Assembly: GCA_002269645.1 (NCBI GenBank)
Contig: NIVC01000168.1
Location: 124,001-188,000, forward strand
DNA length: 64,000 nt
Source of the DNA: Macrostomum lignano
Lineage: Eukaryota
Direction of reading: 5' to 3'
Position numbers and translations under genes: made by a program. Below the pieces are notes generated by a model, which worked only from the letters and a program-made list of their open reading frames with translations, was not told where the DNA came from and ran no database searches. Of the stretch, positions 1-62,601 are shown piece after piece (positions within the stretch are counted from its first letter, which is position 1; the number at the start of each line of letters is the position of its first letter).

Positions 1-954
1 CTGACTGACTGACTGACTGACTGACTGACTGACTGACTGACTGACTGACTGACTGACTGACTGACTGACTGACTGACTGACTGACTGACTGACTGACTGA
101 CTGACTGACTGACTGACTGACTGACTGACTGACTGACTGACTGACTGACTGACTGACTGACTGACTGACTGACTGACTGACTGACTGACTGACTGACTGA
201 CTGACTGACTGACTGACTGACTGACTGACTGACTGACTGACTGACTGACTGACTGACTGACTGACTGACTGACTGACTGACTGACTGACTGACTGACTGA
301 CTGACTGACTGACTGACTGACTGACTGACTGACTGACTGACTGACTGACTGACTGACTGACTGACTGACTGACTGACTGACTGACTGACTGACTGACTGA
401 CTGACTGACTGACTGACTGACTGACTGACTGACTGACTGACTGACTGACTGACTGACTGACTGACTGACTGACTGACTGACTGACTGACTGACTGACTGA
501 CTGACTGACTGACTGACTGACTGACTGACTGACTGACTGACTGACTGACTGACTGACTGACTGACTGACTGACTGACTGACTGACTGACTGACTGACTGA
601 CTGACTGACTGACTGACTGACTGACTGACTGACTGACTGACTGACTGACTGACTGACTGACTGACTGACTGACTGACTGACTGACTGACTGACTGACTGA
701 CTGACTGACTGACTGACTGACTGACTGACTGACTGACTGACTGACTGACTGACTGACTGACTGACTGACTGACTGACTGACTGACTGACTGACTGACTGA
801 CTGACTGACTGACTGACTGACTGACTGACTGACTGACTGACTGACTGACTGACTGACTGACTGACTGACTGACTGACTGACTGACTGACTGACTGACTGA
901 CTGACTGACTGACTGACTGACTGACTGACTGACTGACTGACTGACTGACTGACT

Positions 955-984
<30 letters not shown>
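1..984. repeat. (CTGA)n microsatellite ending in a short (CAGA)n run; truncated by the window start
   Basis: Perfect CTGA repeats to about 955, then CAGA repeats to about 984. Confidence 0.99.
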
Positions 985-985
<1 letters not shown>

Positions 986-3342: not shown

Positions 3343-6300
3343 AAATTGAGCTTATAAGATGGTTAAATGGGAGCTTATAAGATGGTTAAATGGAGCTTAT
3401 AAGATGGTTAAATGGGAGCTTATAAGATGGTTAAATGGAGCTTATAAGATGGTTAAATGGGAGCTTATAAGATGGTTAAATGGGAGCTTATAAGATGGTT
3501 AAATGGGAGCTTATAAGATGGTTAAATGGAGCTTATAAGATGGTTAAATGGGAGCTTATAAGATGGTTAAATGGGAGCTTATAAGATGGTTAAATGGGAG
3601 CTTATAAGATGGTTAAATGAGCTTATAAGATGGTTAAATGGGAGCTTATAAGATGGTTAAATGGGAGCTTATAAGATGGTTAAATGGAGCTTATAAGATG
3701 GTTAAATGAGCTTATAAGATGGTTAAATGGAGCTTATAAGATGGTTAAATGGGAGCTTATAAGATGGTTAAATGGGAGCTTATAAGATGGTTAAATGGGA
3801 GCTTATAAGATGGTTAAATGAGCTTATAAGATGGTTAAATGGAGCTTATAAGATGGTTAAATGGGAGCTTATAAGATGGTTAAATGGGAGCTTATAAGAT
3901 GGTTAAATTGAGCTTATAAGATGGTTAAATGGGAGCTTATAAGATGGTTAAATGGGAGCTTATAAGATGGTTAAATGGGAGCTTATAAGATGGTTAAATG
4001 AGCTTATAAGATGGTTAAATGGAGCTTATAAGATGGTTAAATGGAGCTTATAAGATGGTTAAATGGGAGCTTATAAGATGGTTAAATGGAGCTTATAAGA
4101 TGGTTAAATGGAGCTTATAAGATGGTTAAATGAGCTTATAAGATGGTTAAATGGGAGCTTATAAGATGGTTAAATGGGAGCTTATAAGATGGTTAAATGG
4201 GAGCTTATAAGATGGTTAAATTGAGCTTATAAGATGGTTAAATGGAGCTTATAAGATGGTTAAATGGGAGCTTATAAGATGGTTAAATGGAGCTTATAAG
4301 ATGGTTAAATTGAGCTTATAAGATGGTTAAATGGAGCTTATAAGATGGTTAAATGGGAGCTTATAAGATGGTTAAATGGGAGCTTATAAGATGGTTAAAT
4401 TGAGCTTATAAGATGGTTAAATGGAGCTTATAAGATGGTTAAATGGGAGCTTATAAGATGGTTAAATGGGAGCTTATAAGATGGTTAAATGGGAGCTTAT
4501 AAGATGGTTAAATTGAGCTTATAAGATGGTTAAATTGAGCTTATAAGATGGTTAAATGGGAGCTTATAAGATGGTTAAATGGAGCTTATAAGATGGTTAA
4601 ATTGAGCTTATAAGATGGTTAAATTGAGCTTATAAGATGGTTAAATGGGAGCTTATAAGATGGTTAAATGGAGCTTATAAGATGGTTAAATGGGAGCTTA
4701 TAAGATGGTTAAATTGAGCTTATAAGATGGTTAAATGGAGCTTATAAGATGGTTAAATGGAGCTTATAAGATGGTTAAATGGGAGCTTATAAGATGGTTA
4801 AATTGAGCTTATAAGATGGTTAAATGGGAGCTTATAAGATGGTTAAATGGAGCTTATAAGATGGTTAAATGGAGCTTATAAGATGGTTAAATGGAGCTTA
4901 TAAGATGGTTAAATGGAGCTTATAAGATGGTTAAATGGGAGCTTATAAGATGGTTAAATGGAGCTTATAAGATGGTTAAATGGAGCTTATAAGATGGTTA
5001 AATGGAGCTTATAAGATGGTTAAATTGAGCTTATAAGATGGTTAAATGGGAGCTTATAAGATGGTTAAATGGGAGCTTATAAGATGGTTAAATGGGAGCT
5101 TATAAGATGGTTAAATTGAGCTTATAAGATGGTTAAATGGAGCTTATAAGATGGTTAAATGGGAGCTTATAAGATGGTTAAATGGAGCTTATAAGATGGT
5201 TAAATTGAGCTTATAAGATGGTTAAATGGGAGCTTATAAGATGGTTAAATGGGAGCTTATAAGATGGTTAAATGGGAGCTTATAAGATGGTTAAATTGAG
5301 CTTATAAGATGGTTAAATGGAGCTTATAAGATGGTTAAATGGGAGCTTATAAGATGGTTAAATGGGAGCTTATAAGATGGTTAAATGGGAGCTTATAAGA
5401 TGGTTAAATTGAGCTTATAAGATGGTTAAATTGAGCTTATAAGATGGTTAAATGGGAGCTTATAAGATGGTTAAATTGAGCTTATAAGATGGTTAAATTG
5501 AGCTTATAAGATGGTTAAATTGAGCTTATAAGATGGTTAAATGGAGCTTATAAGATGGTTAAATGGAGCTTATAAGATGGTTAAATGGGAGCTTATAAGA
5601 TGGTTAAATTGAGCTTATAAGATGGTTAAATGGAGCTTATAAGATGGTTAAATGGAGCTTATAAGATGGTTAAATGGGAGCTTATAAGATGGTTAAATTG
5701 AGCTTATAAGATGGTTAAATGGGAGCTTATAAGATGGTTAAATGGAGCTTATAAGATGGTTAAATGGAGCTTATAAGATGGTTAAATGGAGCTTATAAGA
5801 TGGTTAAATGGAGCTTATAAGATGGTTAAATGGAGCTTATAAGATGGTTAAATGGAGCTTATAAGATGGTTAAATGGAGCTTATAAGATGGTTAAATGGG
5901 AGCTTATAAGATGGTTAAATGGAGCTTATAAGATGGTTAAATGGGAGCTTATAAGATGGTTAAATTGAGCTTATAAGATGGTTAAATGGGAGCTTATAAG
6001 ATGGTTAAATGGAGCTTATAAGATGGTTAAATGAAGCTTATAAGATGGTTAACTGGAGCTTATAAGATGGTTAAATGGGAGCTTATAAGATGGTTAAATT
6101 GAGCTTATAAGATGGTTAAATGGGAGCTTATAAGATGGTTAAATTGAGCTTATAAGATGGTTAAATTGAGCTTATAAGATGGTTAAATTGAGCTTATAAG
6201 ATGGTTAAATGGAGCTTATAAGATGGTTAAATTGAGCTTATAAGATGGTTAAATGGAGCTTATAAGATGGTTAAATGGAGCTTATAAGATGGTTAAATGG

Positions 6301-9101
6301 AGCTTATAAGATGGTTAAATGGAGCTTATAAGATGGTTAAATGGAGCTTATAAGATGGTTAAATTGAGCTTATAAGATGGTTAAATGGGAGCTTATAAGA
6401 TGGTTAAATGGAGCTTATAAGATGGTTAAATGGAGCTTATAAGATGGTTAAATTGAGCTTATAAGATGGTTAAATGGAGCTTATAAGATGGTTAAATGGA
6501 GCTTATAAGATGGTTAAATGGAGCTTATAAGATGGTTAAATTGAGCTTATAAGATGGTTAAATTGAGCTTATAAGATGGTTAAATTGAGCTTATAAGATG
6601 GTTAAATGGAGCTTATAAGATGGTTAAATTGAGCTTATAAGATGGTTAAATGGGAGCTTATAAGATGGTTAAATTGAGCTTATAAGATGGTTAAATGGAG
6701 CTTATAAGATGGTTAAATGGAGCTTATAAGATGGTTAAATGGGAGCTTATAAGATGGTTAAATTGAGCTTATAAGATGGTTAAATGGGAGCTTATAAGAT
6801 GGTTAAATGGAGCTTATAAGATGGTTAAATGGAGCTTATAAGATGGTTAAATGGAGCTTATAAGATGGTTAAATGGAGCTTATAAGATGGTTAAATGGGA
6901 GCTTATAAGATGGTTAAATGGAGCTTATAAGATGGTTAAATGGAGCTTATAAGATGGTTAAATGGAGCTTATAAGATGGTTAAATGGAGCTTATAAGATG
7001 GTTAAATGGGAGCTTATAAGATGGTTAAATTGAGCTTATAAGATGGTTAAATGGGAGCTTATAAGATGGTTAAATGGAGCTTATAAGATGGTTAAATGGA
7101 GCTTATAAGATGGTTAAATGGAGCTTATAAGATGGTTAAATGGGAGCTTATAAGATGGTTAAATTGAGCTTATAAGATGGTTAAATGGGAGCTTATAAGA
7201 TGGTTAAATTGAGCTTATAAGATGGTTAAATGGAGCTTATAAGATGGTTAAATTGAGCTTATAAGATGGTTAAATGGAGCTTATAAGATGGTTAAATGGA
7301 GCTTATAAGATGGTTAAATGGAGCTTATAAGATGGTTAAATTGAGCTTATAAGATGGTTAAATTGAGCTTATAAGATGGTTAAATTGAGCTTATAAGATG
7401 GTTAAATGGAGCTTATAAGATGGTTAAATTGAGCTTATAAGATGGTTAAATGGGAGCTTATAAGATGGTTAAATTGAGCTTATAAGATGGTTAAATGGAG
7501 CTTATAAGATGGTTAAATGGAGCTTATAAGATGGTTAAATGGGAGCTTATAAGATGGTTAAATTGAGCTTATAAGATGGTTAAATGGGAGCTTATAAGAT
7601 GGTTAAATGGAGCTTATAAGATGGTTAAATGGAGCTTATAAGATGGTTAAATGGAGCTTATAAGATGGTTAAATGGAGCTTATAAGATGGTTAAATGGGA
7701 GCTTATAAGATGGTTAAATGGAGCTTATAAGATGGTTAAATGGAGCTTATAAGATGGTTAAATGGAGCTTATAAGATGGTTAAATGGAGCTTATAAGATG
7801 GTTAAATGGGAGCTTATAAGATGGTTAAATTGAGCTTATAAGATGGTTAAATGGGAGCTTATAAGATGGTTAAATGGAGCTTATAAGATGGTTAAATGGA
7901 GCTTATAAGATGGTTAAATGGAGCTTATAAGATGGTTAAATGGGAGCTTATAAGATGGTTAAATTGAGCTTATAAGATGGTTAAATGGGAGCTTATAAGA
8001 TGGTTAAATTGAGCTTATAAGATGGTTAAATTGAGCTTATAAGATGGTTAAATGGAGCTTATAAGATGGTTAAATGGAGCTTATAAGATGGTTAAATTGA
8101 GCTTATAAGATGGTTAAATGGGAGCTTATAAGATGGTTAAATGGAGCTTATAAGATGGTTAAATGGGAGCTTATAAGATGGTTAAATGGAGCTTATAAGA
8201 TGGTTAAATTGAGCTTATAAGATGGTTAAATGGAGCTTATAAGATGGTTAAATGGAGCTTATAAGATGGTTAAATGGGAGCTTATAAGATGGTTAAATTG
8301 AGCTTATAAGATGGTTAAATGGGAGCTTATAAGATGGTTAAATGGAGCTTATAAGATGGTTAAATGGAGCTTATAAGATGGTTAAATGGAGCTTATAAGA
8401 TGGTTAAATGGAGCTTATAAGATGGTTAAATGGAGCTTATAAGATGGTTAAATGGAGCTTATAAGATGGTTAAATGGGAGCTTATAAGATGGTTAAATGG
8501 AGCTTATAAGATGGTTAAATGGAGCTTATAAGATGGTTAAATGGAGCTTATAAGATGGTTAAATGGAGCTTATAAGATGGTTAAATGGGAGCTTATAAGA
8601 TGGTTAAATTGAGCTTATAAGATGGTTAAATGGGAGCTTATAAGATGGTTAAATGGAGCTTATAAGATGGTTAAATGGAGCTTATAAGATGGTTAAATGG
8701 AGCTTATAAGATGGTTAAATGGAGCTTATAAGATGGTTAAATGGAGCTTATAAGATGGTTAAATGGAGCTTATAAGATGGTTAAATTGAGCTTATAAGAT
8801 GGTTAAATGGAGCTTATAAGATGGTTAAATGGAGCTTATAAGATGGTTAAATGGAGCTTATAAGATGGTTAAATGGAGCTTATAAGATGGTTAAATTGAG
8901 CTTATAAGATGGTTAAATTGAGCTTATAAGATGGTTAAATTGAGCTTATAAGATGGTTAAATTGAGCTTATAAGATGGTTAAATGGAGCTTATAAGATGG
9001 TTAAATGGGAGCTTATAAGATGGTTAAATGGGAGCTTATAAGACGGTTAAATGGGAGTTTATAAGATGGTTAGATGGTTAAATGGGAGCTTATAAGATGG
9101 T
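3343..9101. repeat. 21-23-bp minisatellite, core GAGCTTATAAGATGGTTAAAT plus spacer (none/G/GG/T), about 260 units
   Basis: Read directly; fills most of a DGK intron. Confidence 0.99.
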
Positions 9102-9296: not shown

Positions 9297-11123
9297 TCAT
9301 TGAGTCAGATTGGTCCTCATTGAGTCAGATTGGTCTTCATTGAGTCAGATTGGTCTTCATTGAGTCAGATTGGTCTTCATTGAGTCAGATTGGTCTTCAT
9401 TGAATCAGATTGGTCTTCATTGAATCAGATTGGTCTTCATTGAATCAGATTGGTCTTCATTGAATCAGATTGGTCTTCATTGAATCAGATTGGTCTTCAT
9501 TGAGTCAGATTGGTCCTCATTGAGTCAGATTGGTCTTCATTGAGTCAGATTGGTCCTCATTGAGTCAGATTGGTCTTCATTGAGTCAGATTGGTCTTCAT
9601 TGAGTCAGATTGGTCTTCATTGAATCAGATTGGTCCTCATTGAGTCATATTGGTCTTTATTGAGTCAGATTGGTCCTCATTGAGTCAGATTGGTCTTTAT
9701 TGAGTCAGATTGGTCTTCATTGAGTCAGATTGGCCCTCATTGAGTCAGATTGGTCTTCATTGAGTCAGATTGGTCTTCATTGAGTCAGATTGGTCTTTAT
9801 TGAGTCAGATTGGTCCTCATTGAGTCAGATTGGTCTTCATTTAGTCAGATTGGTCTTCATTGAGTCAGATTGGTCTTCATTGAGTCAGATTGGTCTTCAT
9901 TGAGTCAGATTGGTCTTCAAATTAGTCAAATTGGTCTTCATTGAGTCAGATTGGTCTTCAAATTAGTCAAATTGGTCTTCATTGAGTCAGATTGGTCTTC
10001 ATTGAGTCAGATTGGTCTTCAAATTAGTCAAATTGGTCTTCATTGAGTCAGATTGGTCTTCATTGAGTCAGATTGGTCTTCATTGAGTCAGATTGGTCTT
10101 CATTGAGTCAGATTGGTCTTTATTGAGTCAGATTGGTCCTCATTGAGTCAGATTGGTCTTCATTGAGTCAGATTGGTCTTCATTGAGTCAGATTGGTCTT
10201 CATTGAGTCAGATTGGTCTTCATTGAGTCAGATTGGTCCTCATTGAGTCAGATTGGTCTTCATTGAGTCAGATTGGTCTTCATTGAGTCAGATTGGTCTT
10301 CATTGAGTCAGATTGGTCTTTATTGAGTCAGATTGGTCCTCATTGAGTCAGATTGGTCTTTATTGAGTCAGATTGGTCTTCATTGAGTCAGATTGGTCCT
10401 CATTGAGTCAGATTGGTCTTCATTGAGTCAGATTGGTCTTCATTGAGTCAGATTGGTCTTTATTGAGTCAGATTGGTCCTCATTGAGTCAGATTGGTCTT
10501 CATTGAGTCAGATTGGTCTTCATTGAGTCAGATTGGTCTTCATTGAGTCAGATTGGTCTTCATTGAGTCAGATTGGTCTTCAAATTAGTCAAATTGGTCT
10601 TCATTGAGTCAGATTGGTCTTCAAATTAGTCAAATTGGTCTTCATTGAGTCAGATTGGTCTTCATTGAGTCAGATTGGTCTTCATTGAGTCAGATTGGTC
10701 TTCATTGAGTCAGATTGGTCCTCATTGAGTCAGATTGGTCTTCATTGAGTCAGATTGGTCTTTATTGAGTCAGATTGGTCTTCATTGAGTCAGATTGGTC
10801 CTCATTGAGTCATATTGGTCTTTATTGAGTCAGATTGGTCCTCATTGAGTCATATTGGTCTTTATTGAGTCAGATTGGTCTTCATTGAGTCATATTGGTC
10901 TTTATTGAGTCAGATTGGTCCTCATTGAGTCATATTGGTCTTTATTGAGTCAGATTGGTCCTCATTGAGTCAGATTGGTCTTTATTGAGTCAGATTGGTC
11001 TTTATTGAGTCAGATTGGTCTTCATTGAGTCAGATTGGTCTTTATTGAGTCAGATTGGTCTTTATTGAGTCAGATTGGTCCTCATTGAGTCAGATTGGTC
11101 TTCATTGAGTCAGATTGGTCTTC
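9297..11123. repeat. 20-bp minisatellite CATTGAGTCAGATTGGTCTT, about 90 units
   Basis: Read directly; includes a 21-bp variant CAAATTAGTCAAATTGGTCTT. Confidence 0.99.
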
Positions 11124-11260
11124 AAAATAAGCAAGCAGTTTTTGCCAACAGAACAGCATAACAATGCTACAAAGCAGAATATCAAAACTTGCGGTCTACA
11201 CTTAAGTCTATTTCTAGCAACTTGTCAGATCTGACTATTTGACTATTTGATTATATTTAG

Positions 11261-14827: not shown

Positions 14828-14907
14828 CGTACCCTCTGGGTATCATCTTGGTTGAAGTGGACTCGGATCTCGAACACGTTCGAACCCATATTGATCGACT
14901 CGCATCG
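14828..14907 (+). CDS. DGKZ/DGKI: DGK exon (SYPLGIILVEVDSDLEHVRTHIDRLAS)
   Basis: ttgcag|CG...TCG|gtaagc, phase 1-0; matches S.PLG..VV..D.DLE.CR..I.RL. Confidence 0.93.
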
Positions 14908-14933
14908 GTAAGCTGTTCTGAATGTAGGTAGTT

Positions 14934-15835
14934 GTTGCTGTTGTTGAGACGGGGTGCCTAGCAGTGCTGGGGCGTGGATGAGCCCGGAAGAGGATTTGTC
15001 GTTGGGGTGGGGGGGGGGGCCTGGGTGGACTCGGTCCTAGCACCGTCCCTGATTCCACTATGGGTTGGCGGTGTCTTAGTCCATGGACATTGAGCTAGTA
15101 GCCCCAATTAGGTTTCGCTACCAGGCAATGAGTCCTGGTCCCAATCGTGGCCTCTCGGGCTTCGGCCCCTGGCAGTATGGCCCACTTCAATATCTTAGCG
15201 GCAGAGCCCTTCCCTGAGCTGATCCGCGGGGCCCCTAGGCTACCCCCACCTTCAACAACAACAAGAGGATTGCTGGAAGCAGAGTGGGTCCACCAGGGGT
15301 ACTAGACCCGGGCCACTACCTGAGAAATTGGAATCCTCCTTTTCGTAGCACAAGGAAGAGAGCCTAAGCCATAATAGGCAAGATTGGGCTCCATCAAGGG
15401 CGAAAATTTTTGGGGGTCTTTACTGCGAAGCTCAGTTCTTAGTCTTAGTTTGTTGTTCAAGTCCGGCCTCCTCAGAGACCATCATCCACTGACGCAAAAT
15501 ACCCTTTAGACGGAGTCGCTGTAGGCAACCGAAAGAGATCGATTGCACTACTGGGCGGTGCCTGGAATGGATAGCCTGTCGCCAAGGCCGCCGAAAGCAT
15601 TTCCACAGCCTAGGATCCCCGAATTCCTGGCGGGTCCCACTGGCAGGGTACCAGCTTCTGAGGCACAAGCCTTCTAGGTGGTCCATTTACCAGCTCCCAA
15701 CTCAAGTAGGTTCACCTACTGGTAGCTCAAAGCCGCTCACCAGCAATGCAAGATCACCAGTCAGAAGCCCCATGCTGCACCACAACCCTCCGGGCTTAGT
15801 ACGCCAACTCTGGCAATCTCAAAAAGACCGTCTTT
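14934..15835 (-). mobile_element. 902-bp GC-rich non-coding insertion with 13-bp target-site duplication; probable non-autonomous non-LTR retroelement
   Basis: AATGTAGGTAGTT flanks both sides (14921-14933 and 15836-15848). A short (CAA)-like tail on the minus strand sets the orientation only tentatively. No RT ORF recognised. Confidence 0.8.
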
Positions 15836-16017
15836 AATGTAGGTAGTTACGACAGCCTAAAAAATAACTCGTCTAACTAACAAGCTTTCAAAGCAATGAA
15901 AATATGATAGTTGATAGCAAGTCAACTTTACATGTTTTCCTTTTGATATTTTGTTTTAAGCTCTGTAGTTCCTTTTCGATTACTAAAATTTTAATTGTGG
16001 AAAAATATCGTTTTAAG

Positions 16018-25819: not shown

Positions 25820-28800
25820 CAATACTCTGCTACATCCTGTCTGTTTCATCCTCTGCTTCATCCTCTGCTTCATCCTCTGCTTTATCCTCTGCTTTATCCT
25901 CTGCTTCATCCTCTGCTTTATCCTCTGCTTCATCCTCTGCTTTATCCTCTGCTTCATCCTCTGCTTTATCCTCTGCTTTATCCTCTGCTTCATCCTCTGC
26001 TTTATCCTCTGCTTCATCCTCTGCTTTATCCTCTGCTTCATCCTCTGCTTTATCCTCTGCTTTATCCTCTGCTTCATCCTCTGCTTTATCCTCTGCTTTA
26101 TCCTCTGCTTCATCCTCTGCTTCATCCTCTGCTTCATCCTCTGCTTCATCCTGTGTGTCTCATCCTCTGCTTTATCCTCTGCTTTATCCTCTGCTTTATC
26201 CTCTGCTTCATCCTCTGCTTCATCCTCTGCTTCATCCTGTGTGTCTCATCCTCTGCTTCATCCTGTGTGTCTTATCCTCTGCTTCATCCTGTGTGTCTCA
26301 TCCTCTGCTTCATCCTGTGTGTCTCATCCTCTGCTTCATCCTGTGTGTCTCATCCTCTGCTTCATCCTGTGTGTCTCATCCTCTGCTTCATCCTGTGTGT
26401 CTCATCCTCTGCTTCATCCTGTCTGTCTCATCCTCTGCTTCATCCTGTGTGTCTCATCCTCTGCTTCATCCTCTGCTTCATAAATCGTGACTTTGACAAT
26501 CGGCACTGTGTGTCTCATCCTCTGCTTCATCCTGTCTGTCTCATCCTCTGCTTCATCCTGTCTGTCTCATCCTCTGCTTCATCCTGTCTGTCTCATCCTC
26601 TGCTTCATCCTGTGTGTCTCATCCTCTGCTTCATCCTGTGTGTCTCATCCTCTGCTTCATCCTGTCTGTCTCATCCTCTGCTTCATCCTGTGTGTCTCAT
26701 CCTCTGCTTCATCCTGTGTGTCTCATCCTCTGCTTCATCCTGTGTGTCTCATCCTCTGCTTCATCCTGTGTGTCTCATCCTCTGCTTCATCCTGTGTGTC
26801 TCATCCTCTGCTTCATCCTGTGTGTCTCATCCTCTGCTTCATCCTGTGTGTCTCATCCTCTGCTTCATCCTGTGTGTCTCATCCTCTGCTTCATCCTGTC
26901 GGTTTCATCCTCTACTTCATCCTGTGTGTCTCATCCTCTGCTTCATCCTGTGTGTCTCATCCTCTGCTTCATCCTGTCTGTCTCATCCTCTGCTTCATCC
27001 TCTGCTTCATCCTGTGTGTCTCATCCTCTGCTTCATCCTCTGCTTCATCCTGTGTGTCTCATCCTCTGCTTCATCCTCTGCTTCATCCTGTGTGTCTCAT
27101 CCTCTGCTTCATCCTCTGCTTCATCCTGTGTGTCTCGTCCTCTGCTTCATCCTGTGTGTCTCATCCTCAGCTTCATCCTCTGCTTCATCCTGTGCGTCTC
27201 ATCCTCTGCTTCATCCTGTCTGTCTCATCCTCTGCTTCATCCTCTGCTTCATCCTGTGTGTCTCATCCTCTGCTTCATCCTCTGCTTCATCCTGTGTGTC
27301 TCAACCTCTGCTTCATCCTGTGTGTCTCATCCTCTGCTTCATCCTGTGTGTCTCATCCTCTGCTTCATCCTGTCTGTCTCATCCTCTGCTTCATCCTCTG
27401 CTTCATCCTGTGTGTCTCATCCTCTGCTTCATCCTGTGTGTCTCATCCTCTGCTTCATCCTGTGTGTCTCATCCTCTGCTTCATCCTGTGTGTCTCATCC
27501 TCTGCTTCATCCTGTGTGTCTCATCCTCTGCTTCATCCTGTGTGTCTCATCCTCTGCTTCATCCTGTGTGTCTCATCCTCTGCTTCATCCTGTGTGTCTC
27601 ATCCTCAGCTTCATCCTCTGCTTCATCCTGTGTGTCTCAACCTCTGCTTCATCCTGTGTGTCTCATCCTCTGCTTCATCCTGTGTGTCTCATCCTCTGCT
27701 TCATCCTGTCTGTCTCATCCTCTGCTTCATCCTCTGCTTCATCCTGTGTGTCTCATCCTCTGCTTCATCCTGTGTGTCTCATCCTCTGCTTCATCCTGTG
27801 TGTCTCATCCTCTGCTTCATCCTGTGTGTCTCATCCTCTGCTTCATCCTGTGTGTCTCATCCTCTGCTTCATCCTGTATGTCTCATCCTCTGCTTCATCC
27901 TGTGTGTCTCATCCTCTGCTTCATCCTGTGTGTCTCATCCTCTGCTTCATCCTGTGTGTCTCATCCTCTGCTTCATCCTGTGTGTCTCATCCTCTGCTTC
28001 ATCCTGTGTGTCTCATCCTCTGCTTCATCCTGTGTGTCTCATCCTGTGTGTCTCATTCTCTGCTTCATCTTGTGTGTCCCACCCTTTTTCTCATCCTCTG
28101 CTACACCCTCTGTCTCACTCTGTCTCATCCTCTGTCTTACCCTCTATCTCATTGTTTGTCCTTTCCTTTGCCGCACCGCAGAAACGCTACAACCCTGCAC
28201 TTTTATATATTGACGGTAAATCTAGGCCAAACAATTATAAGGTATGACTAATATTTTCTACAAAAATTCGTACAAATTTACAGTTGATTGAACTCAAAAA
28301 ATAGTCTATGAGTCCGCATGAAGCCCCCTACCCCGTCGTAGTCACATTTAGTGATTAAAGCATGTTGGATATGTTTTGGGAGCAGGGGGGTGGGGGGAAC
28401 CTAAGGGCTAGAATCTAGATTAGGCTAGTGCTGAGGGGAGTACAGCGCATGCAGATGACCACCAGCCAAGGGTTGGGGCGCCAGACAGACAGGCCAGGCA
28501 GACTGAGGAATGGGGTGTGGGGTGAGCGTGGGAGAGAGTGTTTCTAGGAAGTGCACGTGGTGGGGAAGTGGGAAATGCGGCGCTCATGGAGACCGAAACA
28601 GAGAACTCTCTGGATTGCCCAACTCATCAACAAGCACGAGATTTTAGCACCAATAATGATAATAACAATTGATTACACCTGACAGCTCAGCCGCAGCTAT
28701 TGCGCGACGCATCTGAAGGCTGCCAAATATAGCGCCACAGGACCAGATTTTAGAACCATTTCCTCCTCTGCTTCATACTGTGTGTCTCATCCTCTGCTTC

Positions 28801-31800
28801 ATCCTGTGTGTCTCATCCTCTGCTTCATCCTGTGTGTCTCATCCTCTGCTTCATCCTGTGTGTCTCATCCTCTGCTTCATCCTGTGTGTCTCATCCTCTG
28901 CTTCATCCTGTGTGTCTCATCCTCTGCTTCATCCTGTGTGTCTCATCCTCTGCTTCATCCTGTGTGTCTCATCCTCTGCTTCATCCTGTGTGTCTCATCC
29001 TCTGCTTCATCCTGTGTGTCTCATCCTCTGCTTCATCCTGTGTGTCTCATCCTCTGCTTCATCCTGTGTGTCTCATCCTCTGCTTCATCCTGTGTGTCTC
29101 ATCCTCTGCTTCATCATGTGTGTCGTCTCATCCTCTGCTTCATCCTGTGTGTCTCATCCTCTGCTTCATCCTGTGTGTCTCATCCTCGGCTTCATCCTGT
29201 GTGTCTCATCCTCTGCTTCATCATGTGTGTCTCATCCTCTGCTTCATCATGTGTGTCTCATCCTCTGCTTCATCCTGTGTGTCTCATCCTCTGCTTCATC
29301 CTGTGTGTCTCATCCTCTGCTTCATCCTGTGTGTCTCATCCTCTGCTTCATCCTGTGTGTCTCATCCTCTGCTTTATCCTCTGCTTCATCCTCTGTTTTA
29401 TCCTCTGCTTCATCCTCTGCTTCATCCTATGCTTCATCCTGTGTGTCTCATCCTCTGCTTCATCCTGTGTGTCTCATCCTCTGCTTCATCCTGTGTGTCT
29501 CATCCTCTGCTTCATCCTGTGTGTCTCATCCTCTGCTTCATCATGTGTGTCTCATCCTCTGCTTCATCATGTGTGTCTCATCCTCTGCTTCATCATGTGT
29601 GTCTCATCCTCTGCTTCATCATGTGTGTCTCATCCTCTGCTTCATCCTGTGTGTCTCATCCTCTGCTTCATCCTGTCTGTCTCATCCTCTGCTTCATCCT
29701 GTGTGTCTCATCCTCTGCTTCATCCTGTGTGTCTCATCCTCTGCTTCATCCTGTGTGTCTCATCCTCCGCTTCATCCTGTGTGTCTCATCCTCTGCTTCA
29801 TCCTGTCTGTCTCATCCCCTGCTTCATCCTGTGTGTCTCATCCTCTGCTTTATCCTCTGCTTCATCCTCTGTTTTATCCTCTGCTTCATCCTCTGCTTCA
29901 TCCTGTGTGTCTCATCCTCTGCTTCATCCTGTGTGTCTCATCCTCTGCTTCATCCTGTGTGTCTCATCCTCTGCTTCATCCTGTGTGTCTCATCCTCTGC
30001 TTCATCCTGTGTGTCTCATTCTCTGCTTCATCTTGTGTGTCCCACCCTTTTTCTCATCCTCTGCTACACCCTCTGTCTCACTCTGTCTCATCCTCTGTCT
30101 TACCCTCTATCTCATTGTTTGTCCTTTCCTTTGCCGCACCGCAGAAACGCTACAACCCTGCACTTTTATATATTGACGGTAAATCTAGGCCAAACAATTA
30201 TAAGGTATGACTAATATTTTCTACAAAAATTCGTACAAATTTACAGTTGATTGAACTCAAAAAATAGTCTATGAGTCCGCATGAAGCCCCTACCCCGTCG
30301 TAGTCACATTTAGTGATTAAAGCATGTTGGATATGTTTTGGGAGCAGGGGGGTGGGGGGAACCTAAGGGCTAGAATCTAGATTAGGCTAGTGCTGAGGGG
30401 AGTACAGCGCATGCAGATGACCACCAGCCAAGGGTTGGGGCGCCAGACAGACAGGCCAGGCAGACTGAGGAATGGGGTGTGGGGTGAGCGTGGGAGAGAG
30501 TGTTTCTAGGAAGTGCACGTGGTGGGGAAGTGGGAAATGCGGCGCTCATGGAGACCGAAACAGAGAACTCTCTGGATTGCCCAACTCATCAACAAGCACG
30601 AGATTTTAGCACCAATAATGATAATAACAATTGATTACACCTGACAGCTCAGCCGCAGCTATTGCGCGACGCATCTGAAGGCTGCCAAATATAGCGCCAC
30701 AGGACCAGATTTTAGAACCATTTCCTCCTCTGCTTCATCCTGTGTGTCTCATCCTCTGCTTCATCCTGTGTGTCTCATCCTCTGCTTCATCCTGTGTGTC
30801 TCATCCTCTGCTTCATCCTGTGTGTCTCATCCTCTGCTTCATCCTGTGTGTCTCATCCTCTGCTTCATCCTGTGTGTCTCATCCTCTGCTTCATCCTGTG
30901 TGTCTCATCCTCTGCTTCATCCTGTGTGTCTCATCCTCTGCTTCATCCTGTGTGTCTCATCCTCTGCTTCATCCTGTGTGTCTCATCCTCTGCTTCATCC
31001 TGTGTGTCTCATCCTCTGCTTCATCCTGTGTGTCTCATCCTCTGCTTCATCCTGTGTGTCTCATCCTCTGCTTCATCCTGTGTGTCTCATCCTCTGCTTC
31101 ATCATGTGTGTCGTCTCATCCTCTGCTTCATCCTGTGTGTCTCATCCTCTGCTTCATCCTGTGTGTCTCATCCTCGGCTTCATCCTGTGTGTCTCATCCT
31201 CTGCTTCATCATGTGTGTCTCATCCTCTGCTTCATCATGTGTGTCTCATCCTCTGCTTCATCCTGTGTGTCTCATCCTCTGCTTCATCCTGTGTGTCTCA
31301 TCCTCTGCTTCATCCTGTGTGTCTCATCCTCTGCTTCATCCTGTGTGTCTCATCCTCTGCTTTATCCTCTGCTTCATCCTCTGTTTTATCCTCTGCTTCA
31401 TCCTCTGCTTCATCCTCTGCTTCATCCTGTGTGTCTCATCCTCTGCTTCATCCTGTGTGTCTCATCCTCTGCTTCATCCTGTGTGTCTCATCCTCTGCTT
31501 CATCCTGTGTGTCTCATCCTCTGCTTCATCATGTGTGTCTCATCCTCTGCTTCATCATGTGTGTCTCATCCTCTGCTTCATCATGTGTGTCTCATCCTCT
31601 GCTTCATCATGTGTGTCTCATCCTCTGCTTCATCCTGTGTGTCTCATCCTCTGCTTCATCCTGTGTGTCTCATCCTCTGCTTCATCCTGTCTGTCTCATC
31701 CTCTGCTTCATCCTGTGTGTCTCATCCTCTGCTTCATCCTGTGTGTCTCATCCTCTGCTTCATCCTGTGTGTCTCATCCTCCGCTTCATCCTGTGTGTCT

Positions 31801-33000
31801 CATCCTCTGCTTCATCCTGTCTGTCTCATCCCCTGCTTCATCGTGTGTGTCTCATCCTCTGCTTTATCCTCTGCTTCATCCTCTGTTTTATCCTCTGCTT
31901 CATCCTCTGCTTCATCCTCTGCTTCATCCTCTGCTTCATCCTGTGTGTCTCATCCTCTGCTTCATCGTGTGTGTCTCATCATCTGATTCATCCTGTGTGT
32001 CTCATCCTCTGCTTTATCCTCTGCTTTATCCTCTGCTTCATCCTCTGCTTTATCCTCTGCTTTATCCTCTGCTTCATCCTCTGCTTTATCCTCTGCTTTA
32101 TCCTCTGCTTCATCCTCTGCTTCATCCTCTGCTTCATCCTCTGCTTCATCCTGTGTGTCTCATCCTCTGCTTTATCCTCTGCTTTATCCTCTGCTTTATC
32201 CTCTGCTTCATCCTCTGCTTCATCCTCTGCTTCATCCTTTGTGTCTCATCCTCTGCTTCATCCTGTGTGTCTCATCCTCTGCTTCATCCTGTGTGTCTCA
32301 TCCTCTGCTTCATCCTGTGTGTCTCATCCTCTGCTTCATCCTGTGTGTCTCATCCTCTGCTTCATCCTGTGTGTCTCATCCTCTGCTTCATCCTGTGTGT
32401 CTCATCCTCTGCTTCATCCTGTGTGTCTCATCCTCTGCTTCATCCTGTGTGTCTCATCCTCTGCTTCATCCTGTGTGTCTCATCCTCTGCTTCATCTTGT
32501 GTGTCTCATCCTCTGCTTCATCTTGTGTGTCTCATCCTCTGCTTCATCCTGTGTGTCTCATCCTCTGCTTCATCCTGTGTGTCTCATCCTCTGCTTCATC
32601 CTGTGTGTCTCATCCTCTGCTTCATCCTGTGTGTCTCATCCTCTGCTTCATCCTGTGTGTCTCATCCTCTGCTTCATCCTGTGTGTCTCATCCTCTGCTT
32701 CATCCTGTGTGTCTCATCCTCTGCTTCATCCTGTGTGTCTCATCCTCTGCTTCATCCTGTGTGTCTCATCCTCTGCTTCATCCTGTCTGTCTCATCCCCT
32801 GCTTCATCTTGTGTGTCTCATCCTCTGCTTCATCCTGTGTGTCTCATCCCCTGCTTCATCCTGTGTGTCTCATCCTCTGCTTCATCCTGTGTGTCTCATC
32901 CTCTGCTTCATCCTGTGTGTCTCATCCTCTGCTTCATCCTGTGTGTCTCATCCTCTGCTTCATCCTGTGTGTCTCATCCTCTGCTTCATCCTGTGTGTCT
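25820..33000. repeat. Composite minisatellite of 12-mer CATCCTCTGCTT and 14-mer CATCCTGTGTGTCT (mostly a 26-bp dimer), interrupted by a repeated 708-bp block
   Basis: Read directly; produces the spurious 400-800 aa ORFs. Confidence 0.98.
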
Positions 33001-33708
33001 CATTCTCTGCTTCATCTTGTGTGTCCCACCCTTTTTCTCATCCTCTGCTACACCCTCTGTCTCACTCTGTCTCATCCTCTGTCTTACCCTCTATCTCATT
33101 GTTTGTCCTTTCCTTTGCCGCACCGCAGAAACGCTACAACCCTGCACTTTTATATATTGACGGTAAATCTAGGCCAAACAATTATAAGGTATGACTAATA
33201 TTTTCTACAAAAATTCGTACAAATTTACAGTTGATTGAACTCAAAAAATAGTCTATGAGTCCGCATGAAGCCCCCTACCCCGTCGTAGTCACATTTAGTG
33301 ATTAAAGCATGTTGGATATGTTTTGGGAGCAGGGGGGTGGGGGGAACCTAAGGGCTAGAATCTAGATTAGGCTAGTGCTGAGGGGAGTACAGCGCATGCA
33401 GATGACCACCAGCCAAGGGTTGGGGCGCCAGACAGACAGGCCAGGCAGACTGAGGAATGGGGTGTGGGGTGAGCGTGGGAGAGAGTGTTTCTAGGAAGTG
33501 CACGTGGTGGGGAAGTGGGAAATGCGGCGCTCATGGAGACCGAAACAGAGAACTCTCTGGATTGCCCAACTCATCAACAAGCACGAGATTTTAGCACCAA
33601 TAATGATAATAACAATTGATTACACCTGACAGCTCAGCCGCAGCTATTGCGCGACGCATCTGAAGGCTGCCAAATATAGCGCCACAGGACCAGATTTTAG
33701 AACCATTT
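28054..33708. repeat. Three direct copies of a ~708-bp block (28054-28761, 30017-30723, 33001-33708)
   Basis: Copies look identical apart from a C5/C4 homopolymer difference in copy 2. Confidence 0.95.
28648..28744 (-). mobile_element. 97-bp 5'-truncated retro-insertion with 9-bp TSD (also at 30610-30706 and 33595-33691)
   Basis: TSD AGATTTTAG at 28639-28647 and 28745-28753; minus strand has GCAGCCTTCAGATGCGTCGCGCAATAGCTG...CAGGTGTAATCAATTGTTATTAT, the same tail as the SINE at 53700. Confidence 0.8.
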
Positions 33709-35782: not shown

Positions 35783-36316
<534 letters not shown>

Positions 36317-37950: not shown

Positions 37951-38490
<540 letters not shown>

Positions 38491-39073
38491 AATATCCAGA
38501 TGCATACATATACACAAGCTATAGATAGACTAGAGCATATATAAACACAAAATGAGGGCAGAGTATGTGGCGCACTGATGGCAATTTCCAGACATTTGAA
38601 AATGGGACAGCGCGATGTAAATTGCCTCTGTCGTGGTCCCTTCTTTCTCTCTCTCATCCCTTTCCCCTGCCTCCTCTCAGGCTCTCGAAAAGCGTCCCCC
38701 CTCTCTCCTGTCCCTCTGCACTGTCGCATCCTCAATTGATTGCAAATATTCGAAAAAGTCGAGTTATAACCGCTCACGCAGCACTGCACAGGCTCTGGGG
38801 GAGAGCTTAGATAGATCCCTCCAATTTCACCTCTCGGGATACCGCAGTCTCCTAAGGGGTGCAGCGGCTGGGAACCTACTACCACCCCTTTGCCCGTCAG
38901 TCCTCAAGTGTTACTTACGGCCTTCGTTCCGTCAGCCAACAAAAGTGCAAGTTATAATCCATCTCTTTACATCATATAGATTGTGAAAGGACAGGAACTT
39001 TGGTTGGTGTGCGCCAATTTGTAGCTTTTCGAGTTAACTTTCACTTCGTGGCTATAATTACATATAATTATGG

Positions 39074-41112: not shown

Positions 41113-42260
41113 AGGGGTAGATAGATGAAAAATAGGATGGTAGATCGATGGACAATAGGATGGTAGATCGATGGACAATAGGATGGTAGATCGATGGACA
41201 ATAGGATGATAGATAGATGGACAATAGGATGGTAGATAGATGGACAATAGGATGGTAGATAGATGGACAATAGGATGGTAGATAGATGGACAATAGGATG
41301 GTAGATAGATGGACAATAGGATGGTAGATAGATGGACAATAGGATGATAGATCGATAGACAATAGGATGGTAGATAGATGGACAATAGGATAGTAGATAG
41401 ATAGACAATAGGATGATAGATAGATGGACAATAGGATGGTAGATAGATGGACAATAGGATGATAGATAGATGGACAATAGGATGTTACATCGATGGACAA
41501 TAGGATGGTAGATCGATGGACAATAGGATGATAGATAGATGGACAATAGGATGGTAGATAGATGGACAATAGGATGATAGATAGATGGACAATAGGATGT
41601 TACATCGATGGACAATAGGATGGTAGATCGATGGACAATAGGATGGTAGATCGATGGACAATATGATGATAGATAGATGGACAATAGGATGTTAGATCGA
41701 TGGACAATAGGATGATAGATAGATGGACAACAATATGATGGTAGATAGATGGACAATAGGATGTTACATCGATGGACAATAGGATGGTAGATCGATGGAA
41801 AATGGGATGGTATATTGATAGACAATGGGATAATAGATAGATGGACAATAGGATGGTAGATAGATGGACAATAGGATGGTAGATAGAGGGACAATAGGAC
41901 GTTACATCGATGGACAATAGGATGGTAGATCGATGGACAATAGGATGATAGATAGATGAAAAATAGGATGGTAGATCGATGGACAATAGGATAGTAGATC
42001 GATGGACAATAGGATGGTAGATCGATGGACAATAGGATGGTAGATCGATGGACAATAGGATGTTACATCGATGGACAATAGGATGGTAGATCGATGGACA
42101 ATAGGATGGTAGATCGATGGACAATAGGATGGTAGATCGATGGACAATAGGATGATAGACAGGTGGACAATAGGATGGTAAATAGATGGACAATAGGATG
42201 GTAGATAGATAGATGGACAATAAGATGGTAGATAGATGGACAATAGAAGGGTAGATAAAT
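41113..42260. repeat. 23-bp minisatellite GATAGATGGACAATAGGATGGTA
   Basis: Read directly. Confidence 0.96.
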
Positions 42261-42641
42261 GAAAAAATAACATATAAGAAAGTTTAATAGCAGATGGATG
42301 AAAAAGAATCTGAGCCATGAAGCAAAATATAAGTCAGTATAATTGACTGCCTATGTTTTAAAGCGATTGGTTCTGATCTGGCATTTGGCAATACTATGAC
42401 CAAAACAATTTGGCGCTGAAAGTCTCAAGCAACTGTAATGAGAAATTCTCCACAATGGAAATAACCCTTTGCAGGAAAGGTCACGGTAAGGCTAAGCGTT
42501 GCAATTTTGAAGCGTGATAGAGGGGGAATGAGTTCCGCTGCCGCTAGGGAAGTTGTCCAGAGTGTCACTCAAGCGGAGACCGGGATTATAATGGTCACGC
42601 GATGAAATACTGCAGAGTTAGTAGAGTAGTTTGAGTGTTAA

Positions 42642-49896: not shown

Positions 49897-49906
49897 GTAA
49901 GTGGTT

Positions 49907-50860
<954 letters not shown>

Positions 50861-50865
50861 CACAG

Positions 50866-60319: not shown

Positions 60320-60821
60320 GTGAGCACTATACTGTGGGCACATGATTGAGCAGTATATTTTCTTAGACTATTTTGCTTACGTCTCTTTCTCTCTTTGCCT
60401 GCTCATTTTTTCCTGCCTCTGCAGTCTTTTAAAAGCGTCCATAAACATAGGCGATGCATAATACACTGCAGAAAAATGTTTTTAAGGTGCGCGCGGCATC
60501 TAAGCACGGTTGTAGAAATTACAATAATAGACTTCTATTTGCCGCGTTGTTGGTAACTACTTCAACACTGTTTACGTACATATACGCAGCATATATTTAA
60601 TTCCAGAGAGGATTCTGTAAAATATCAATCTAAGTTGGTAAGTTTTTACTTGAACGCTGCATCTATTTAATATACGCTGTCGTATTTGAATTAGGCCAGA
60701 AAGACAAAATCGACTATAAGATTACCGACAGCCGTAAAGCTTGCCAATCAACAAATTCATACGCAAACTCGTCTCGTCTCCCTCTTTGCAGACCTTTAAA
60801 GCGCGCGATAGAACGCTTGCA

Positions 60822-62162
60822 ATGTCCAATCAGCCAGAGAAGCAGTCGGGTGAGCTCAGGCGAGCCGGCAGTCAAATCCCATCGCAGGCCACGGCCTCGG
60901 CAGCTGCAGCGGCAGTCGCCGCACCGACATTCTTCAGCAGGACCAGCACCTTTTCGAAAACTTTGACAGAGCGCGAGAAAACTATCGTGACAGAAATGTT
61001 CGATAGTCGACAAAGAAACGCTACAAGAACTATGCTTGACAATCTGATCGAGAAAAGGCCAGAAGATGAGGATGCCAACGAGCAAGAGGAGGAGCCTGGA
61101 AGCGAAGAGGTCGCGGGGACGAAGACGGAGGCTCAACCTCAAGGCGAGAAGGCGACAGCGGAGGTGGACGTTGAAAAACGACGTCGTAAAAAGCGTCGCC
61201 GTCTTAAGCCAGGAGAATTCGATTTCTCAGACGTGACAGATTCGCGAAATCTGACGCAACTGACGCAGCTACGGTTGCGACCGCACGAACTTCAGGGCTC
61301 TTGGTCGCAAAAGCTGTACAGTCTGGTGTGTCGACGCCTGTCCCTAGCGCCGCGACAGTACATTCGGGACACCCTAGCCAAGGCTAAGCTCGTCTTGGCT
61401 AATAAATTCTCCCAAAGTGAGGAGATCCTATCCGTGGCCGTCAGCATGACGGACAATCGGACCCTCACCTGCGTTGAAATAGTGGACAACAAGCTGGATA
61501 CAAAGAGCATCGCGTACTTGTGCCACGCCGTATGGGAGTGCGCCAGCATCAACAGCTTCACTCTGGCTGGCAATGAGTTCACAGACGAAGGCCTGTCAAT
61601 CGTGATCGAATTACTGGTTGCAACCCGGCACCTGCATACGGTATCGCTGAGGGACAATCGAATCCGCGACGTGCACGGTCCGAAAATTGCGGAGCTACTT
61701 GAGCAAAACCGTAGCATCACCAATCTGGACTTAAGCTACAACCAGCTCGGAGACACGGCTGCGCAGTACATCGGCCCGGCTTTGGCTGAGAACGACCGAG
61801 TTCGACACCTGAACCTCAACTGGAACTGCTTCAGGTCCGTTGGCGTTCGTCTGCTTACCAGAAACCTAAACGAGAACATTGCCCTGCGGGAATTGACCCT
61901 GAAAATGAACGGCTTGGGCATCGAGGGTGCCGGCTACGTGGCAAATACCTGGCAACTAACGAGACTCTGTTTAGCATCGATTTGAGCAGCAATCGAATTG
62001 GCGACTTTGGCTTCGAGCTGATCTCGAAAATGGTCGCTAAGAACTACTCACTGAAGGAGATTAAAATTGGTCATAACACTGTCAGCACTTCCGGTGTTTA
62101 CAAAGTGCTTGAGGCTTTCCATAGGAACAAGGATTCTGATCTCAGGATTTTGGACTTTGAAG
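60822..62162 (+). CDS. LRRC74: LRRC74-like RNI-type leucine-rich-repeat protein, main exon; one-base frameshift at about 61943-61949
   Basis: First ATG after acceptor 60791. Repeats such as LDLSYNQLGDTAA, LNLNWNCFRSVG and LTLKMNGLGIEGA continue in the -1 frame as LATNETLFSIDLSSNRIGDFG. Confidence 0.78.
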
Positions 62163-62496: not shown

Positions 62497-62601
62497 CCTG
62501 GTGCTAAAGCCCCTGGTGCTGGCGCCCATGGTGCTAAAGCCCCTGGTGCTAAAGACCCTGTGCTAAAGCCCTTGTCTGCTAAAGCCCTGGCGCTGGCGCC
62601 C
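62497..62601. repeat. 15-bp CCCCTGGTGCTAAAG minisatellite, locus 4
   Basis: Read directly. Confidence 0.9.

What the first reader, a model, noticed from the sequence alone, without database searches (positions are those of the whole stretch)
15822..15836. The insertion's inferred 5' end matches the start of the spliced-leader exon
On the minus strand the element begins TAAAGACGGTCT(T)TT exactly at the TSD boundary. The M. lignano SL exon, as I recall it and cannot verify here, is CCGTAAAGACGGTCTCTTACTGCGAAGACTCAATTTATTGCATG. That gives a 12/12 match to SL nt 4-15 (14/15 to nt 18), after which the match stops. Trans-splicing would add the whole leader, so a partial 5' leader points instead to an element resident inside an SL gene and transcribed from the SL promoter. 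Trypanosomatid SLACS/CZAR/CRE and nematode NeSL are established SL-targeting retrotransposons. This may be a dispersed non-autonomous copy of an undescribed SL-associated retroelement (inference).
Basis: partly seen in the sequence, partly recalled or inferred. Interest (0 to 1): 0.7.

Follow-up and report, generated by a model that had tools for sequence, protein, structure and literature searches.

The report
Retroposed insert starting with spliced-leader bases
A 902-base non-coding insertion in an intron of a Macrostomum-type flatworm gene begins with 12 bases identical to the start of the worm's spliced-leader RNA and holds two more decayed leader-gene-like stretches, so it probably derives from a leader-RNA gene locus, but only this one copy could be examined.

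Summary
On the minus strand, 15836-15825 reads TAAAGACGGTCT, directly next to a perfect 13-bp target-site duplication. An SL RNA gene I recovered from a metagenome contig shows these bases are collinear in the gene.

The window is from the Macrostomum lineage: the only database relative of its plexin is an M. lignano protein (67% identity).

The insert (14934-15835, minus strand) is 902 bp and 56% GC in 36% GC flanks. It has no coding remnant and a CAACAACAGCAAC tail, so it looks like a target-primed retroposition. It lies 26 nt into a diacylglycerol-kinase intron.

New here: the body holds two more SL-gene-like stretches. One is antisense, 22 of 23 bases matching SL nt 11-35 (two 1-nt gaps). 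The other is sense and crosses the exon/intron junction (CATGG[AC]TAAGACACC). Together they exceed every simulated control.

A 5' leader piece plus SL-intron sequence cannot come from trans-splicing. Origin from an SL RNA gene locus is the best reading. Template switching onto SL RNA, and chance, remain live rivals.

The parts
14934..15835 (-). Inserted element: 902 bp, non-coding, 55.7% GC against 35.5% GC in the flanks
   Evidence: Bounded by a perfect 13-bp duplication. GC contrast measured. No ORF above 84 aa. No Pfam match in any of six frames at E<=10. No Rfam or tRNA match. No other copy in the window. No plasmid or vector match.
15836..15848 (.). Target-site duplication, copy at the element's 5' side (AATGTAGGTAGTT on the + strand). 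Base 15836 is shared with the SL match.
14921..14933 (.). Target-site duplication, copy at the element's 3' side. Its first bases in element orientation (AAC) overlap in sequence with the CAA-type tail, giving microhomology for priming.
15825..15836 (-). 5' terminal TAAAGACGGTCT, identical to SL exon nt 5-16 (45-nt numbering). Extends to 14/15 through 15822.
14934..14946 (-). 3' tail CAACAACAGCAAC (simple-repeat-like, not poly-A), abutting the duplication
15415..15437 (+). Internal stretch antisense to the element: GGTCTTTACTGCGAAGCTCAGTT, 22 of its 23 bases matching SL exon nt 11-35 with two 1-nt gaps. It is the best SL-like local alignment in the whole 64-kb window.
15049..15094 (-). Internal stretch in element sense, resembling SL RNA gene nt 30-76 across the exon/intron junction (CATGG[AC]TAAGACACC against CATGG|TAAGACACC). 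The GT donor is destroyed by the 2-nt insertion, so it is not a working SL gene.
14895..14920 (+). Host context: end of a + strand exon of a diacylglycerol-kinase-iota-like gene, with putative donor G|GTAAGC at 14908. The insertion point is 26 nt into the intron and the element is antisense to the host gene.
   Evidence: The splice site is inferred from sequence only.

Best explanation
The 902-bp element is a non-autonomous retroposed sequence. It was inserted by target-primed reverse transcription, borrowing a non-LTR reverse transcriptase. Its source RNA came from a spliced-leader RNA gene locus rather than from a trans-spliced mRNA.

Shown:
- It is an insertion with a 13-bp duplication and a CAA-type tail.
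- Its first 11-12 bases are the cap-proximal bases 5-16 of the SL exon.
- Its body holds two degenerate SL-gene-like stretches, one antisense (exon nt 11-35) and one sense across the exon/intron boundary.

Inferred:
- The master copy is a rearranged or interrupted SL RNA gene locus.
- Transcription starts at the SL start site, so it yields the perfect leader 5' end.
- The transcript leaves the normal SL sequence after about nt 16 and runs through old SL-gene debris.
- It ends in a tail that a resident LINE enzyme can prime on. The AAC overlap between tail and target fits such priming.
- The missing first 4 leader bases are ordinary slight 5' truncation, or joining at the 1-nt T microhomology.

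It does not require an SL-specific endonuclease.
For: Insertion anatomy:
- Perfect 13-bp duplication.
- GC 55.7% against 35.5% in the flanks.
- CAACAACAGCAAC tail overlapping the AAC of the target.

Leader identity:
- 12/12 and 14/15 against the published 44-45-nt leader and against a genomic SL RNA gene.

Internal SL-gene-like stretches:
- Smith-Waterman scores are 17 (antisense), 16 (sense) and 13 (terminus).
- In 1500 Markov simulations of the element, the best score reached 17 in 0.3% of runs. The second-best, the third-best and the sum of three never reached the observed values.
- The same three places are the top three under three other scoring schemes, with the sum never reached in 600 simulations each.
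- Within the real window, the element holds the single best tile out of 1827 and two of the four loci scoring 15 or more.

Other points:
- The sense stretch includes SL intron bases (TAAGACACC), which only the gene or the unspliced SL RNA contain.
- Organism: the only database relative of the window's plexin is from M. lignano.
Against: - Only one copy was seen, so nothing shows that the leader bases are a family feature rather than a one-off.
- The terminal piece is 100% identical, while the internal stretches match SL at 22 of 23 bases and at roughly 70% (about 34 of 46 element bases, gaps aside). They cannot have the same age.
- Beyond nt 15 the 5' ~115 nt of the element is not detectably SL-RNA-like (P = 0.08-0.3).
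- Similarity to the SL gene's upstream region is not above the empirical background.
- The internal matches are modest by the empirical null: two other loci in the window also reach score 15.
- The inverted-repeat relation between the two internal units is not significant.
- The match starts at leader nt 5, not at the transcription start.
- The SL gene used for comparison comes from a metagenome contig whose species is unknown.
Confidence: 0.42

Rival explanations
1. The element is a non-autonomous derivative of a site-specific non-LTR retrotransposon with a restriction-like endonuclease. That retrotransposon lives inside SL exons after about nt 16, as the CRE clade and NeSL do. It is transcribed from the SL promoter, and here it has landed off-target.
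For: The 5' leader fragment sits at the exact terminus. CRE-clade elements insert at one fixed position in SL RNA genes (PMC12278014), and NeSL families are SL-specific (PMC4640811). The internal sense SL-gene-like stretch could be co-mobilised target flank.
Against: This copy is in a kinase intron whose target has no SL similarity. There is no reverse-transcriptase, endonuclease or zinc-finger remnant, and no partner element in the window. M. lignano has only about 8 SL RNA genes in the deduplicated assembly (PMC8629364), which is a very small niche. The one SL gene I could see (L005) is uninterrupted. Site-specific elements rarely give clean off-target insertions.
Confidence: 0.15
2. A chimeric retrocopy made by template switching. 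The reverse transcriptase reached the 5' end of an ordinary non-autonomous element RNA. It then jumped onto abundant nuclear SL RNA at a TCT/TT microhomology near nt 16 and copied it towards its cap. This is comparable to U6-L1 chimeras in mammals (own knowledge).
For: The terminal piece is perfect while everything else SL-like is decayed, as expected for a per-insertion event. The junction GGTCT|TTTT against GGTCT|CTT offers 3-5 nt of microhomology. SL RNA is an abundant small nuclear RNA (established knowledge).
Against: The known chimeras carry the small RNA through to its 3' end, not a 12-nt 5' piece (own knowledge). It does not explain why the body of the same element is also enriched in SL-gene-like stretches, unless the family has done this repeatedly.
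Confidence: 0.2
3. Coincidence. This is an ordinary full-length or 5'-truncated non-LTR or SINE-like insertion whose first 12 bases happen to match the leader. The match is helped by the near-palindromic AAAGAC-G-GTCTTT.
For: 23% of simulated 64-kb windows contain some exact SL 12-mer. The internal matches are only moderately above the real-sequence background. The head beyond nt 15 is not SL-like.
Against: Placement exactly at the duplication boundary is about 2e-5 per element by my calculation. The best SL-like alignment of the whole window and a further top-four locus fall in the same 1.4% of the window. The joint score was never reached in 1500 plus 3x600 simulations.
Confidence: 0.2
4. 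A relic of trans-splicing. A transposon transcript received the leader by trans-splicing and was then reverse-transcribed and integrated. This is how partial leaders inside LTR and LINE elements of parasitic flatworms have been read.
For: 597 partial-leader loci associated with mobile elements are reported in parasitic flatworm genomes and interpreted this way (PMC12582326). The internal antisense stretch (leader nt 11-35) could be such an old relic.
Against: Trans-splicing adds the whole leader ending ...TTGCATG, and 5' truncation keeps the 3' part. Here the terminus has nt 5-16 only, and the 3' 29 nt are absent. The sense internal stretch contains SL intron bases that are never trans-spliced.
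Confidence: 0.03

Closest known systems
CRE-clade retrotransposons of trypanosomatids (SLACS, CZAR, CRE1/2)
   Same: A retroelement physically tied to spliced-leader RNA genes. Resident copies sit a few bases into the leader exon (PMC12278014), so transcripts can begin with the first leader bases (own knowledge: SLACS RNA starts at +1 of the interrupted SL gene).
   Different: Those are autonomous (reverse transcriptase plus restriction-like endonuclease), have a poly-A tail and are found inside SL genes. This copy is non-coding, has a CAA-type tail and lies in a kinase intron. No SL-resident copy has been seen.
NeSL-1 and related SL1-specific non-LTR elements of nematodes (NeSL/Utopia lineage)
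   Same: Animal example of SL-exon targeting. Planarian relatives (LIN families) target other multicopy RNA genes (PMC4640811).
   Different: No coding capacity here, no SL target, and no evidence of lineage membership.
Partial leader sequences inside LTR/LINE elements of parasitic flatworms (Mol Biol Evol 2025, PMC12582326)
   Same: Flatworm genomes in which mobile elements carry fragments of the leader.
   Different: Those are read as trans-spliced transposon transcripts. Here the fragment is the 5' end of the leader without its 3' end, and SL-intron-like sequence is also present, which that mechanism cannot supply.
Small-RNA/LINE chimeric retrocopies and snRNA-derived SINEs (U6-L1 chimeras, SINEU); own knowledge
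   Same: A small nuclear RNA sequence fused to the 5' end of a retroposed body with a target-site duplication.
   Different: Those carry most or all of the small RNA. Here only 12-15 nt are clearly leader, and the next ~115 nt are not SL-RNA-like.

Membership tests
Target-primed (non-LTR type) retroposed insertion | Target-site duplication flanking the insert | tested here: met
   Perfect 13-bp AATGTAGGTAGTT at 14921-14933 and 15836-15848
Target-primed (non-LTR type) retroposed insertion | 3' A-rich or simple-repeat tail abutting the duplication, with microhomology to the nicked target | tested here: met
   CAACAACAGCAAC followed by a duplication that starts AAC
Target-primed (non-LTR type) retroposed insertion | Multiple dispersed copies, or an autonomous partner sharing the 3' end | not testable with these tools
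   No second copy in the window.
SL-exon-specific non-LTR retrotransposons (CRE clade, NeSL) | Inserted at a fixed position inside an SL RNA gene | tested here: not met
   This copy lies in a diacylglycerol-kinase intron, and its target shows no SL similarity. Whether sibling copies sit in SL genes is untestable here.
SL-exon-specific non-LTR retrotransposons (CRE clade, NeSL) | Encodes reverse transcriptase and restriction-like endonuclease | tested here: not met
   Longest ORF is 84 aa. Six-frame Pfam scan is empty at E<=10.
SL-exon-specific non-LTR retrotransposons (CRE clade, NeSL) | 5' end preceded by, or carrying, the first bases of the leader | tested here: met
   TAAAGACGGTCT equals leader nt 5-16 at the terminus
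Retrocopy of a trans-spliced RNA | Leader present through its 3' end (…TTGCATG) and joined to the body | tested here: not met
   The 3' 29 nt of the leader are absent from the window. The match stops after nt 16-19.
Pol III SINE (tRNA, 5S or 7SL head) | Small-RNA-derived head with an internal promoter | tested here: not met
   ARAGORN found no tRNA. No Rfam match above noise.
SL-RNA-derived SINE-like head (hypothetical) | Similarity to the SL RNA along the first ~100 nt | tested here: not met
   After nt 15, similarity to the rest of the SL RNA is at background (P = 0.08-0.3)
Functional SL RNA gene | Leader exon, GT donor, Sm-like site and three hairpins | tested here: not met
   The internal units lack the donor (CATGGACTAAG; CTTAGTCTTAG). 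For contrast, the L005 gene has all of these.

The most novel reading that the evidence does not exclude
Macrostomum harbours a previously undescribed family of retroelements that lives in, or is driven by, spliced-leader RNA genes. It would be the first SL-gene-associated mobile element in flatworms. Its transcripts start at the SL promoter and carry the first ~16 leader bases, and this 902-bp copy is a dispersed non-autonomous member.
Probability: 0.2. Interest if true: 0.7.

Novelty: new variant of a known kind. Interest (0 to 1): 0.45.

Why it matters
SL-gene-targeting retroelements are textbook cases of 'safe-haven' transposition, but they are known only from trypanosomatids and nematodes. 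A flatworm example would show a third independent use of leader genes as a niche or as a borrowed promoter. Macrostomum is a transgenic, regenerating model with only about 8 SL RNA genes. The finding would also warn annotators that partial leader sequences in flatworm repeats are not all relics of trans-splicing. If instead the leader piece is a template-switch product, it is a small but direct footprint of how the resident reverse transcriptase behaves. If it is chance, the element is an ordinary intronic insertion.

Tried and rejected
- Other copies in the window: none. Tail-motif search: only weak hits with 3 mismatches.
- Other copies elsewhere:
  - A protein search with the element's 84-aa ORF found nothing.
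  - Exact-protein look-ups of window ORFs and of the M. lignano plexin were not on record.
  - Three scans of viral contigs with element strings were empty.
  - A scan of prokaryotic genomes with a degenerate leader/element pattern gave 34 hits in assorted bacterial and archaeal genomes, which I take as chance. In hindsight this was a wasted scan.
- The single metagenome scan went on the leader itself. It paid off: it returned the L005 SL gene and five SL-capped mRNAs. None of those loci shares anything with the window.
- A structured RNA or known RNA family: no Rfam match, no tRNA, and fold z-scores of -1.1 and 0.0.
- Coding remnant: none.
- Vector or bacterial contaminant, prompted by an EcoRI-BamHI-AvrII cluster: no plasmid match.
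- SL-RNA-derived head beyond nt 15: not significant.
- Similarity to the SL gene's upstream (promoter) region: Markov P = 0.02, but 29% of real 903-nt tiles do as well, so rejected.
- A long degenerate inverted repeat joining the two internal SL-like units: suggestive shared motifs (GCGAAA...TTGGGG...AGCTCA), but the score is within the null.
- Other SL 9- to 11-mers in the window (1462, 18763, 24559, 38700, 60731): AT-rich or isolated, and not at insertion ends.

Full report
WHAT IS THERE

Read on the minus strand, the stretch is ...GTCGT AACTACCTACATT AAAGACGGTCTTTTTGAGATTGCC ... CCCCGTCTCAACAACAGCAAC AACTACCTACATT CAGAACAGC.... The repeat finder gives a perfect 13-bp direct repeat, AATGTAGGTAGTT on the + strand, at 14921-14933 and 15836-15848.

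The 902 bp between the repeats (14934-15835) are 55.7% GC, against 35.5% in 2 kb of flank. They end in CAACAACAGCAAC. The last AAC of that tail overlaps in sequence with the start of the duplication, which is the microhomology expected when a nicked target primes reverse transcription.

The insert has:
- no ORF above 84 aa;
- no Pfam match in any frame even at E = 10;
- no Rfam or tRNA match;
- no unusual folding energy on either strand;
- no second copy in the window;
- no plasmid or vector match.

It is therefore a non-coding, retroposition-type insertion. It lies 26 nt into an intron, after a putative G|GTAAGC donor at 14908. The host is a + strand gene with a diacylglycerol-kinase-iota-like exon and downstream ankyrin exons. 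The element is antisense to that gene.

CHECK OF THE OBSERVATION

The 12-mer TAAAGACGGTCT occurs once in the window, at 15825-15836 on the minus strand. M. cliftonense and M. hystrix have the same leader with the same 5' bases (PMC10468722 supplement).

One discrepancy matters. Ustyantsev and Berezikov 2021 (PMC8629364) and the papers they follow use a 35-nt leader starting CGGTCTC, which would leave only six matched bases inside the exon. It returned five SL-capped mRNA contigs and one genomic contig, L005, with a complete SL RNA gene:

...CTCTTT GCCGTAAAGACGGTCTCTTACTGCGAAGACTCAATTTATTGCATG GTAAGACACCGGTGATCC...

This gene folds into three hairpins with z = -3.0. So the TAAAGA bases are collinear in the gene, and three independent transcriptomes put them in the leader.

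The match is real: 12/12 and then 14/15. It starts at leader nt 5 of 45. There is a 1-nt ambiguity because the T at 15836 may belong to the duplication.

ORGANISM

Two protein searches found nothing. The third used the plexin cytoplasmic exons of the window. It returned a single protein, a UniRef entry from Macrostomum lignano, at 67% identity. Exact-sequence look-ups failed.

The window is therefore from the Macrostomum lineage, but the species is not settled. At 67%, the hit is either a paralogue or an orthologue in a congener. Because the three sequenced species share the leader, this does not affect the comparison. The heavy load of micro- and minisatellites fits a Macrostomum genome as well.

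IS IT CHANCE?

An exact SL 12-mer somewhere in 64 kb appears in 23% of Markov simulations, so the bare match proves little.

Its position does count. The chance that one of the two termini of a given insertion carries a leader 12-mer is about 2e-5 by my calculation.

I then asked an independent question: is the rest of the element SL-like?
- The best local alignment between the leader and the entire window lies inside the element, on the opposite strand. It is 15415-15437, GGTCT-TTACTGCGAAG-CTCAGTT, with 22 of its 23 bases matching leader nt 11-35 across two 1-nt gaps, score 17.
- Against the full SL gene of L005, a second stretch appears in element sense at 15094-15049: CTCAAT---GTCCATGGACTAAGACACC-GCCAACCCATAGTGGAATCAG against gene nt 30-76, score 16. 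It crosses the exon/intron junction.
- In 1500 simulations of the element, the best score reached 17 in 0.3% of runs. The second-best, third-best and summed scores never reached the observed values.
- Three other scoring schemes pick the same three places, again never matched by simulation.
- Against real sequence the result is more modest. The element has the single best of 1827 tiles and two of the four loci scoring 15 or more. That is roughly 1e-3 for a stretch occupying 1.4% of the window.

I take the SL relationship as probably real but not proven.

WHAT DID NOT HOLD UP

- The 115 nt after the terminal match are not SL-RNA-like, so this is not a SINE with an SL RNA head.
- A similarity to the region upstream of the L005 SL gene looked promising but is ordinary against real-sequence tiles.
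- The two internal units share motifs not found in the canonical leader (GCGAAA...TTGGGG, and AGCTCA instead of AGACTCA) and face away from each other. However, the alignment between them is within the null.
- Both internal units lack a GT donor, so neither is a working SL gene.

MECHANISM

Trans-splicing can be set aside for the terminus. It adds the whole leader, and truncation would keep the 3' part. Here the 3' 29 nt are absent. The sense internal stretch also carries intron bases.

Three readings remain.

(a) Origin from an SL gene locus. The source RNA starts at the SL start site, leaves the normal sequence after about nt 16, runs through old SL-gene debris and is mobilised in trans. This accounts for all three SL-like places and for their gene-type (intron) content. 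I give it 0.42. Nothing specific to it could be tested, and this copy fails its two testable criteria.

(b) Template switching of the reverse transcriptase onto SL RNA at a TCT/TT microhomology. This explains neatly why the terminal piece is perfect while the internal ones are decayed, but not why the body is SL-enriched. I give it 0.20.

(c) Coincidence: 0.20.

The contrast between 100% identity at the terminus and 22/23 and roughly 70% matching inside is unexplained by any simple single-event model.

COMPARISON WITH WHAT IS KNOWN

The closest systems are the CRE clade and NeSL, which are SL-resident autonomous elements. Next come the partial leaders reported inside LTR and LINE elements of parasitic flatworms (PMC12582326), read there as trans-spliced transposon RNAs. 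After that come small-RNA/LINE chimeras.

The present element works most like a promoter-proximal 5' transduction from a small-RNA gene. It is not a demonstrable member of CRE or NeSL: it has no SL target here and no enzymes. No SL-gene-associated mobile element has been described in flatworms in the papers I could search.

VERDICT

The decisive tests need the Macrostomum assemblies, which these tools could not reach: the 5' ends of sibling copies, the state of the roughly 8 SL loci, and an autonomous partner. Interest is moderate.

Noticed in passing
window 1-985, 3343-9077, 9297-11124, 25825-33032, 35783-36316, 37951-38494, 41116-42261, 49906-50861: Extreme load of tandem repeats: (CTGA)n of 246 units, a 22-bp satellite of 257 copies, a 20-bp array, and a 7-kb 26-bp array. 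Long tetranucleotide microsatellites lie inside plexin introns and create long spurious low-complexity ORFs.
   Followed up: partly
window 36938-57800 (+): A plexin gene: signal peptide and Sema-like first exon, a 717-aa exon with a TIG domain and transmembrane segment, and Plexin_cytopl exons. Its only relative in the 5.8-billion-protein collection is an M. lignano UniRef protein at 67% identity. No other animal plexin passed the word filter.
   Followed up: partly
window 60738-63188 (+): A gene with LRR_6 leucine-rich repeats followed by an EF-hand pair.
   Followed up: no
L005 601-722 (JGI Ga0302322_100095745): A complete Macrostomum-type SL RNA gene in an environmental metagenome contig. 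GCCGTAAA occurs a second time 14 nt upstream of the gene (start to start). A coding gene starts about 1.1 kb downstream. The first 13 leader bases can form a CCGU-AAAG-ACGG mini-hairpin.
   Followed up: partly
L001-L004, L006 (JGI Ga0316592): Contigs whose ends carry the Macrostomum leader, joined directly to different downstream sequences in the two I read (L002, L003). These look like trans-spliced mRNAs of a macrostomid captured in an environmental metatranscriptome.
   Followed up: no
literature (PMC5173321, PMC10468722 against PMC8629364): The M. lignano leader is given as 44-45 nt in some papers and 35 nt in others. The genomic gene in L005 encodes the longer form collinearly, so the true 5' end of the SL RNA deserves an experimental check.
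   Followed up: partly
window about 15607-15625: A cluster of restriction sites, GAATTCGGGGATCCTAGG (EcoRI, BamHI, AvrII), inside the element. It forms part of a 15-nt inverted repeat with 15227-15241. There was no match to any plasmid record.
   Followed up: yes
window 15252-15264, 15450-15461, 14935-14947: The CAA-type tail motif recurs twice inside the element, once inverted (TCAACAACAACAA on the + strand) and once in sense (CTTGAACAACAA). This hints that the 902 bp may be a composite of older units.
   Followed up: partly
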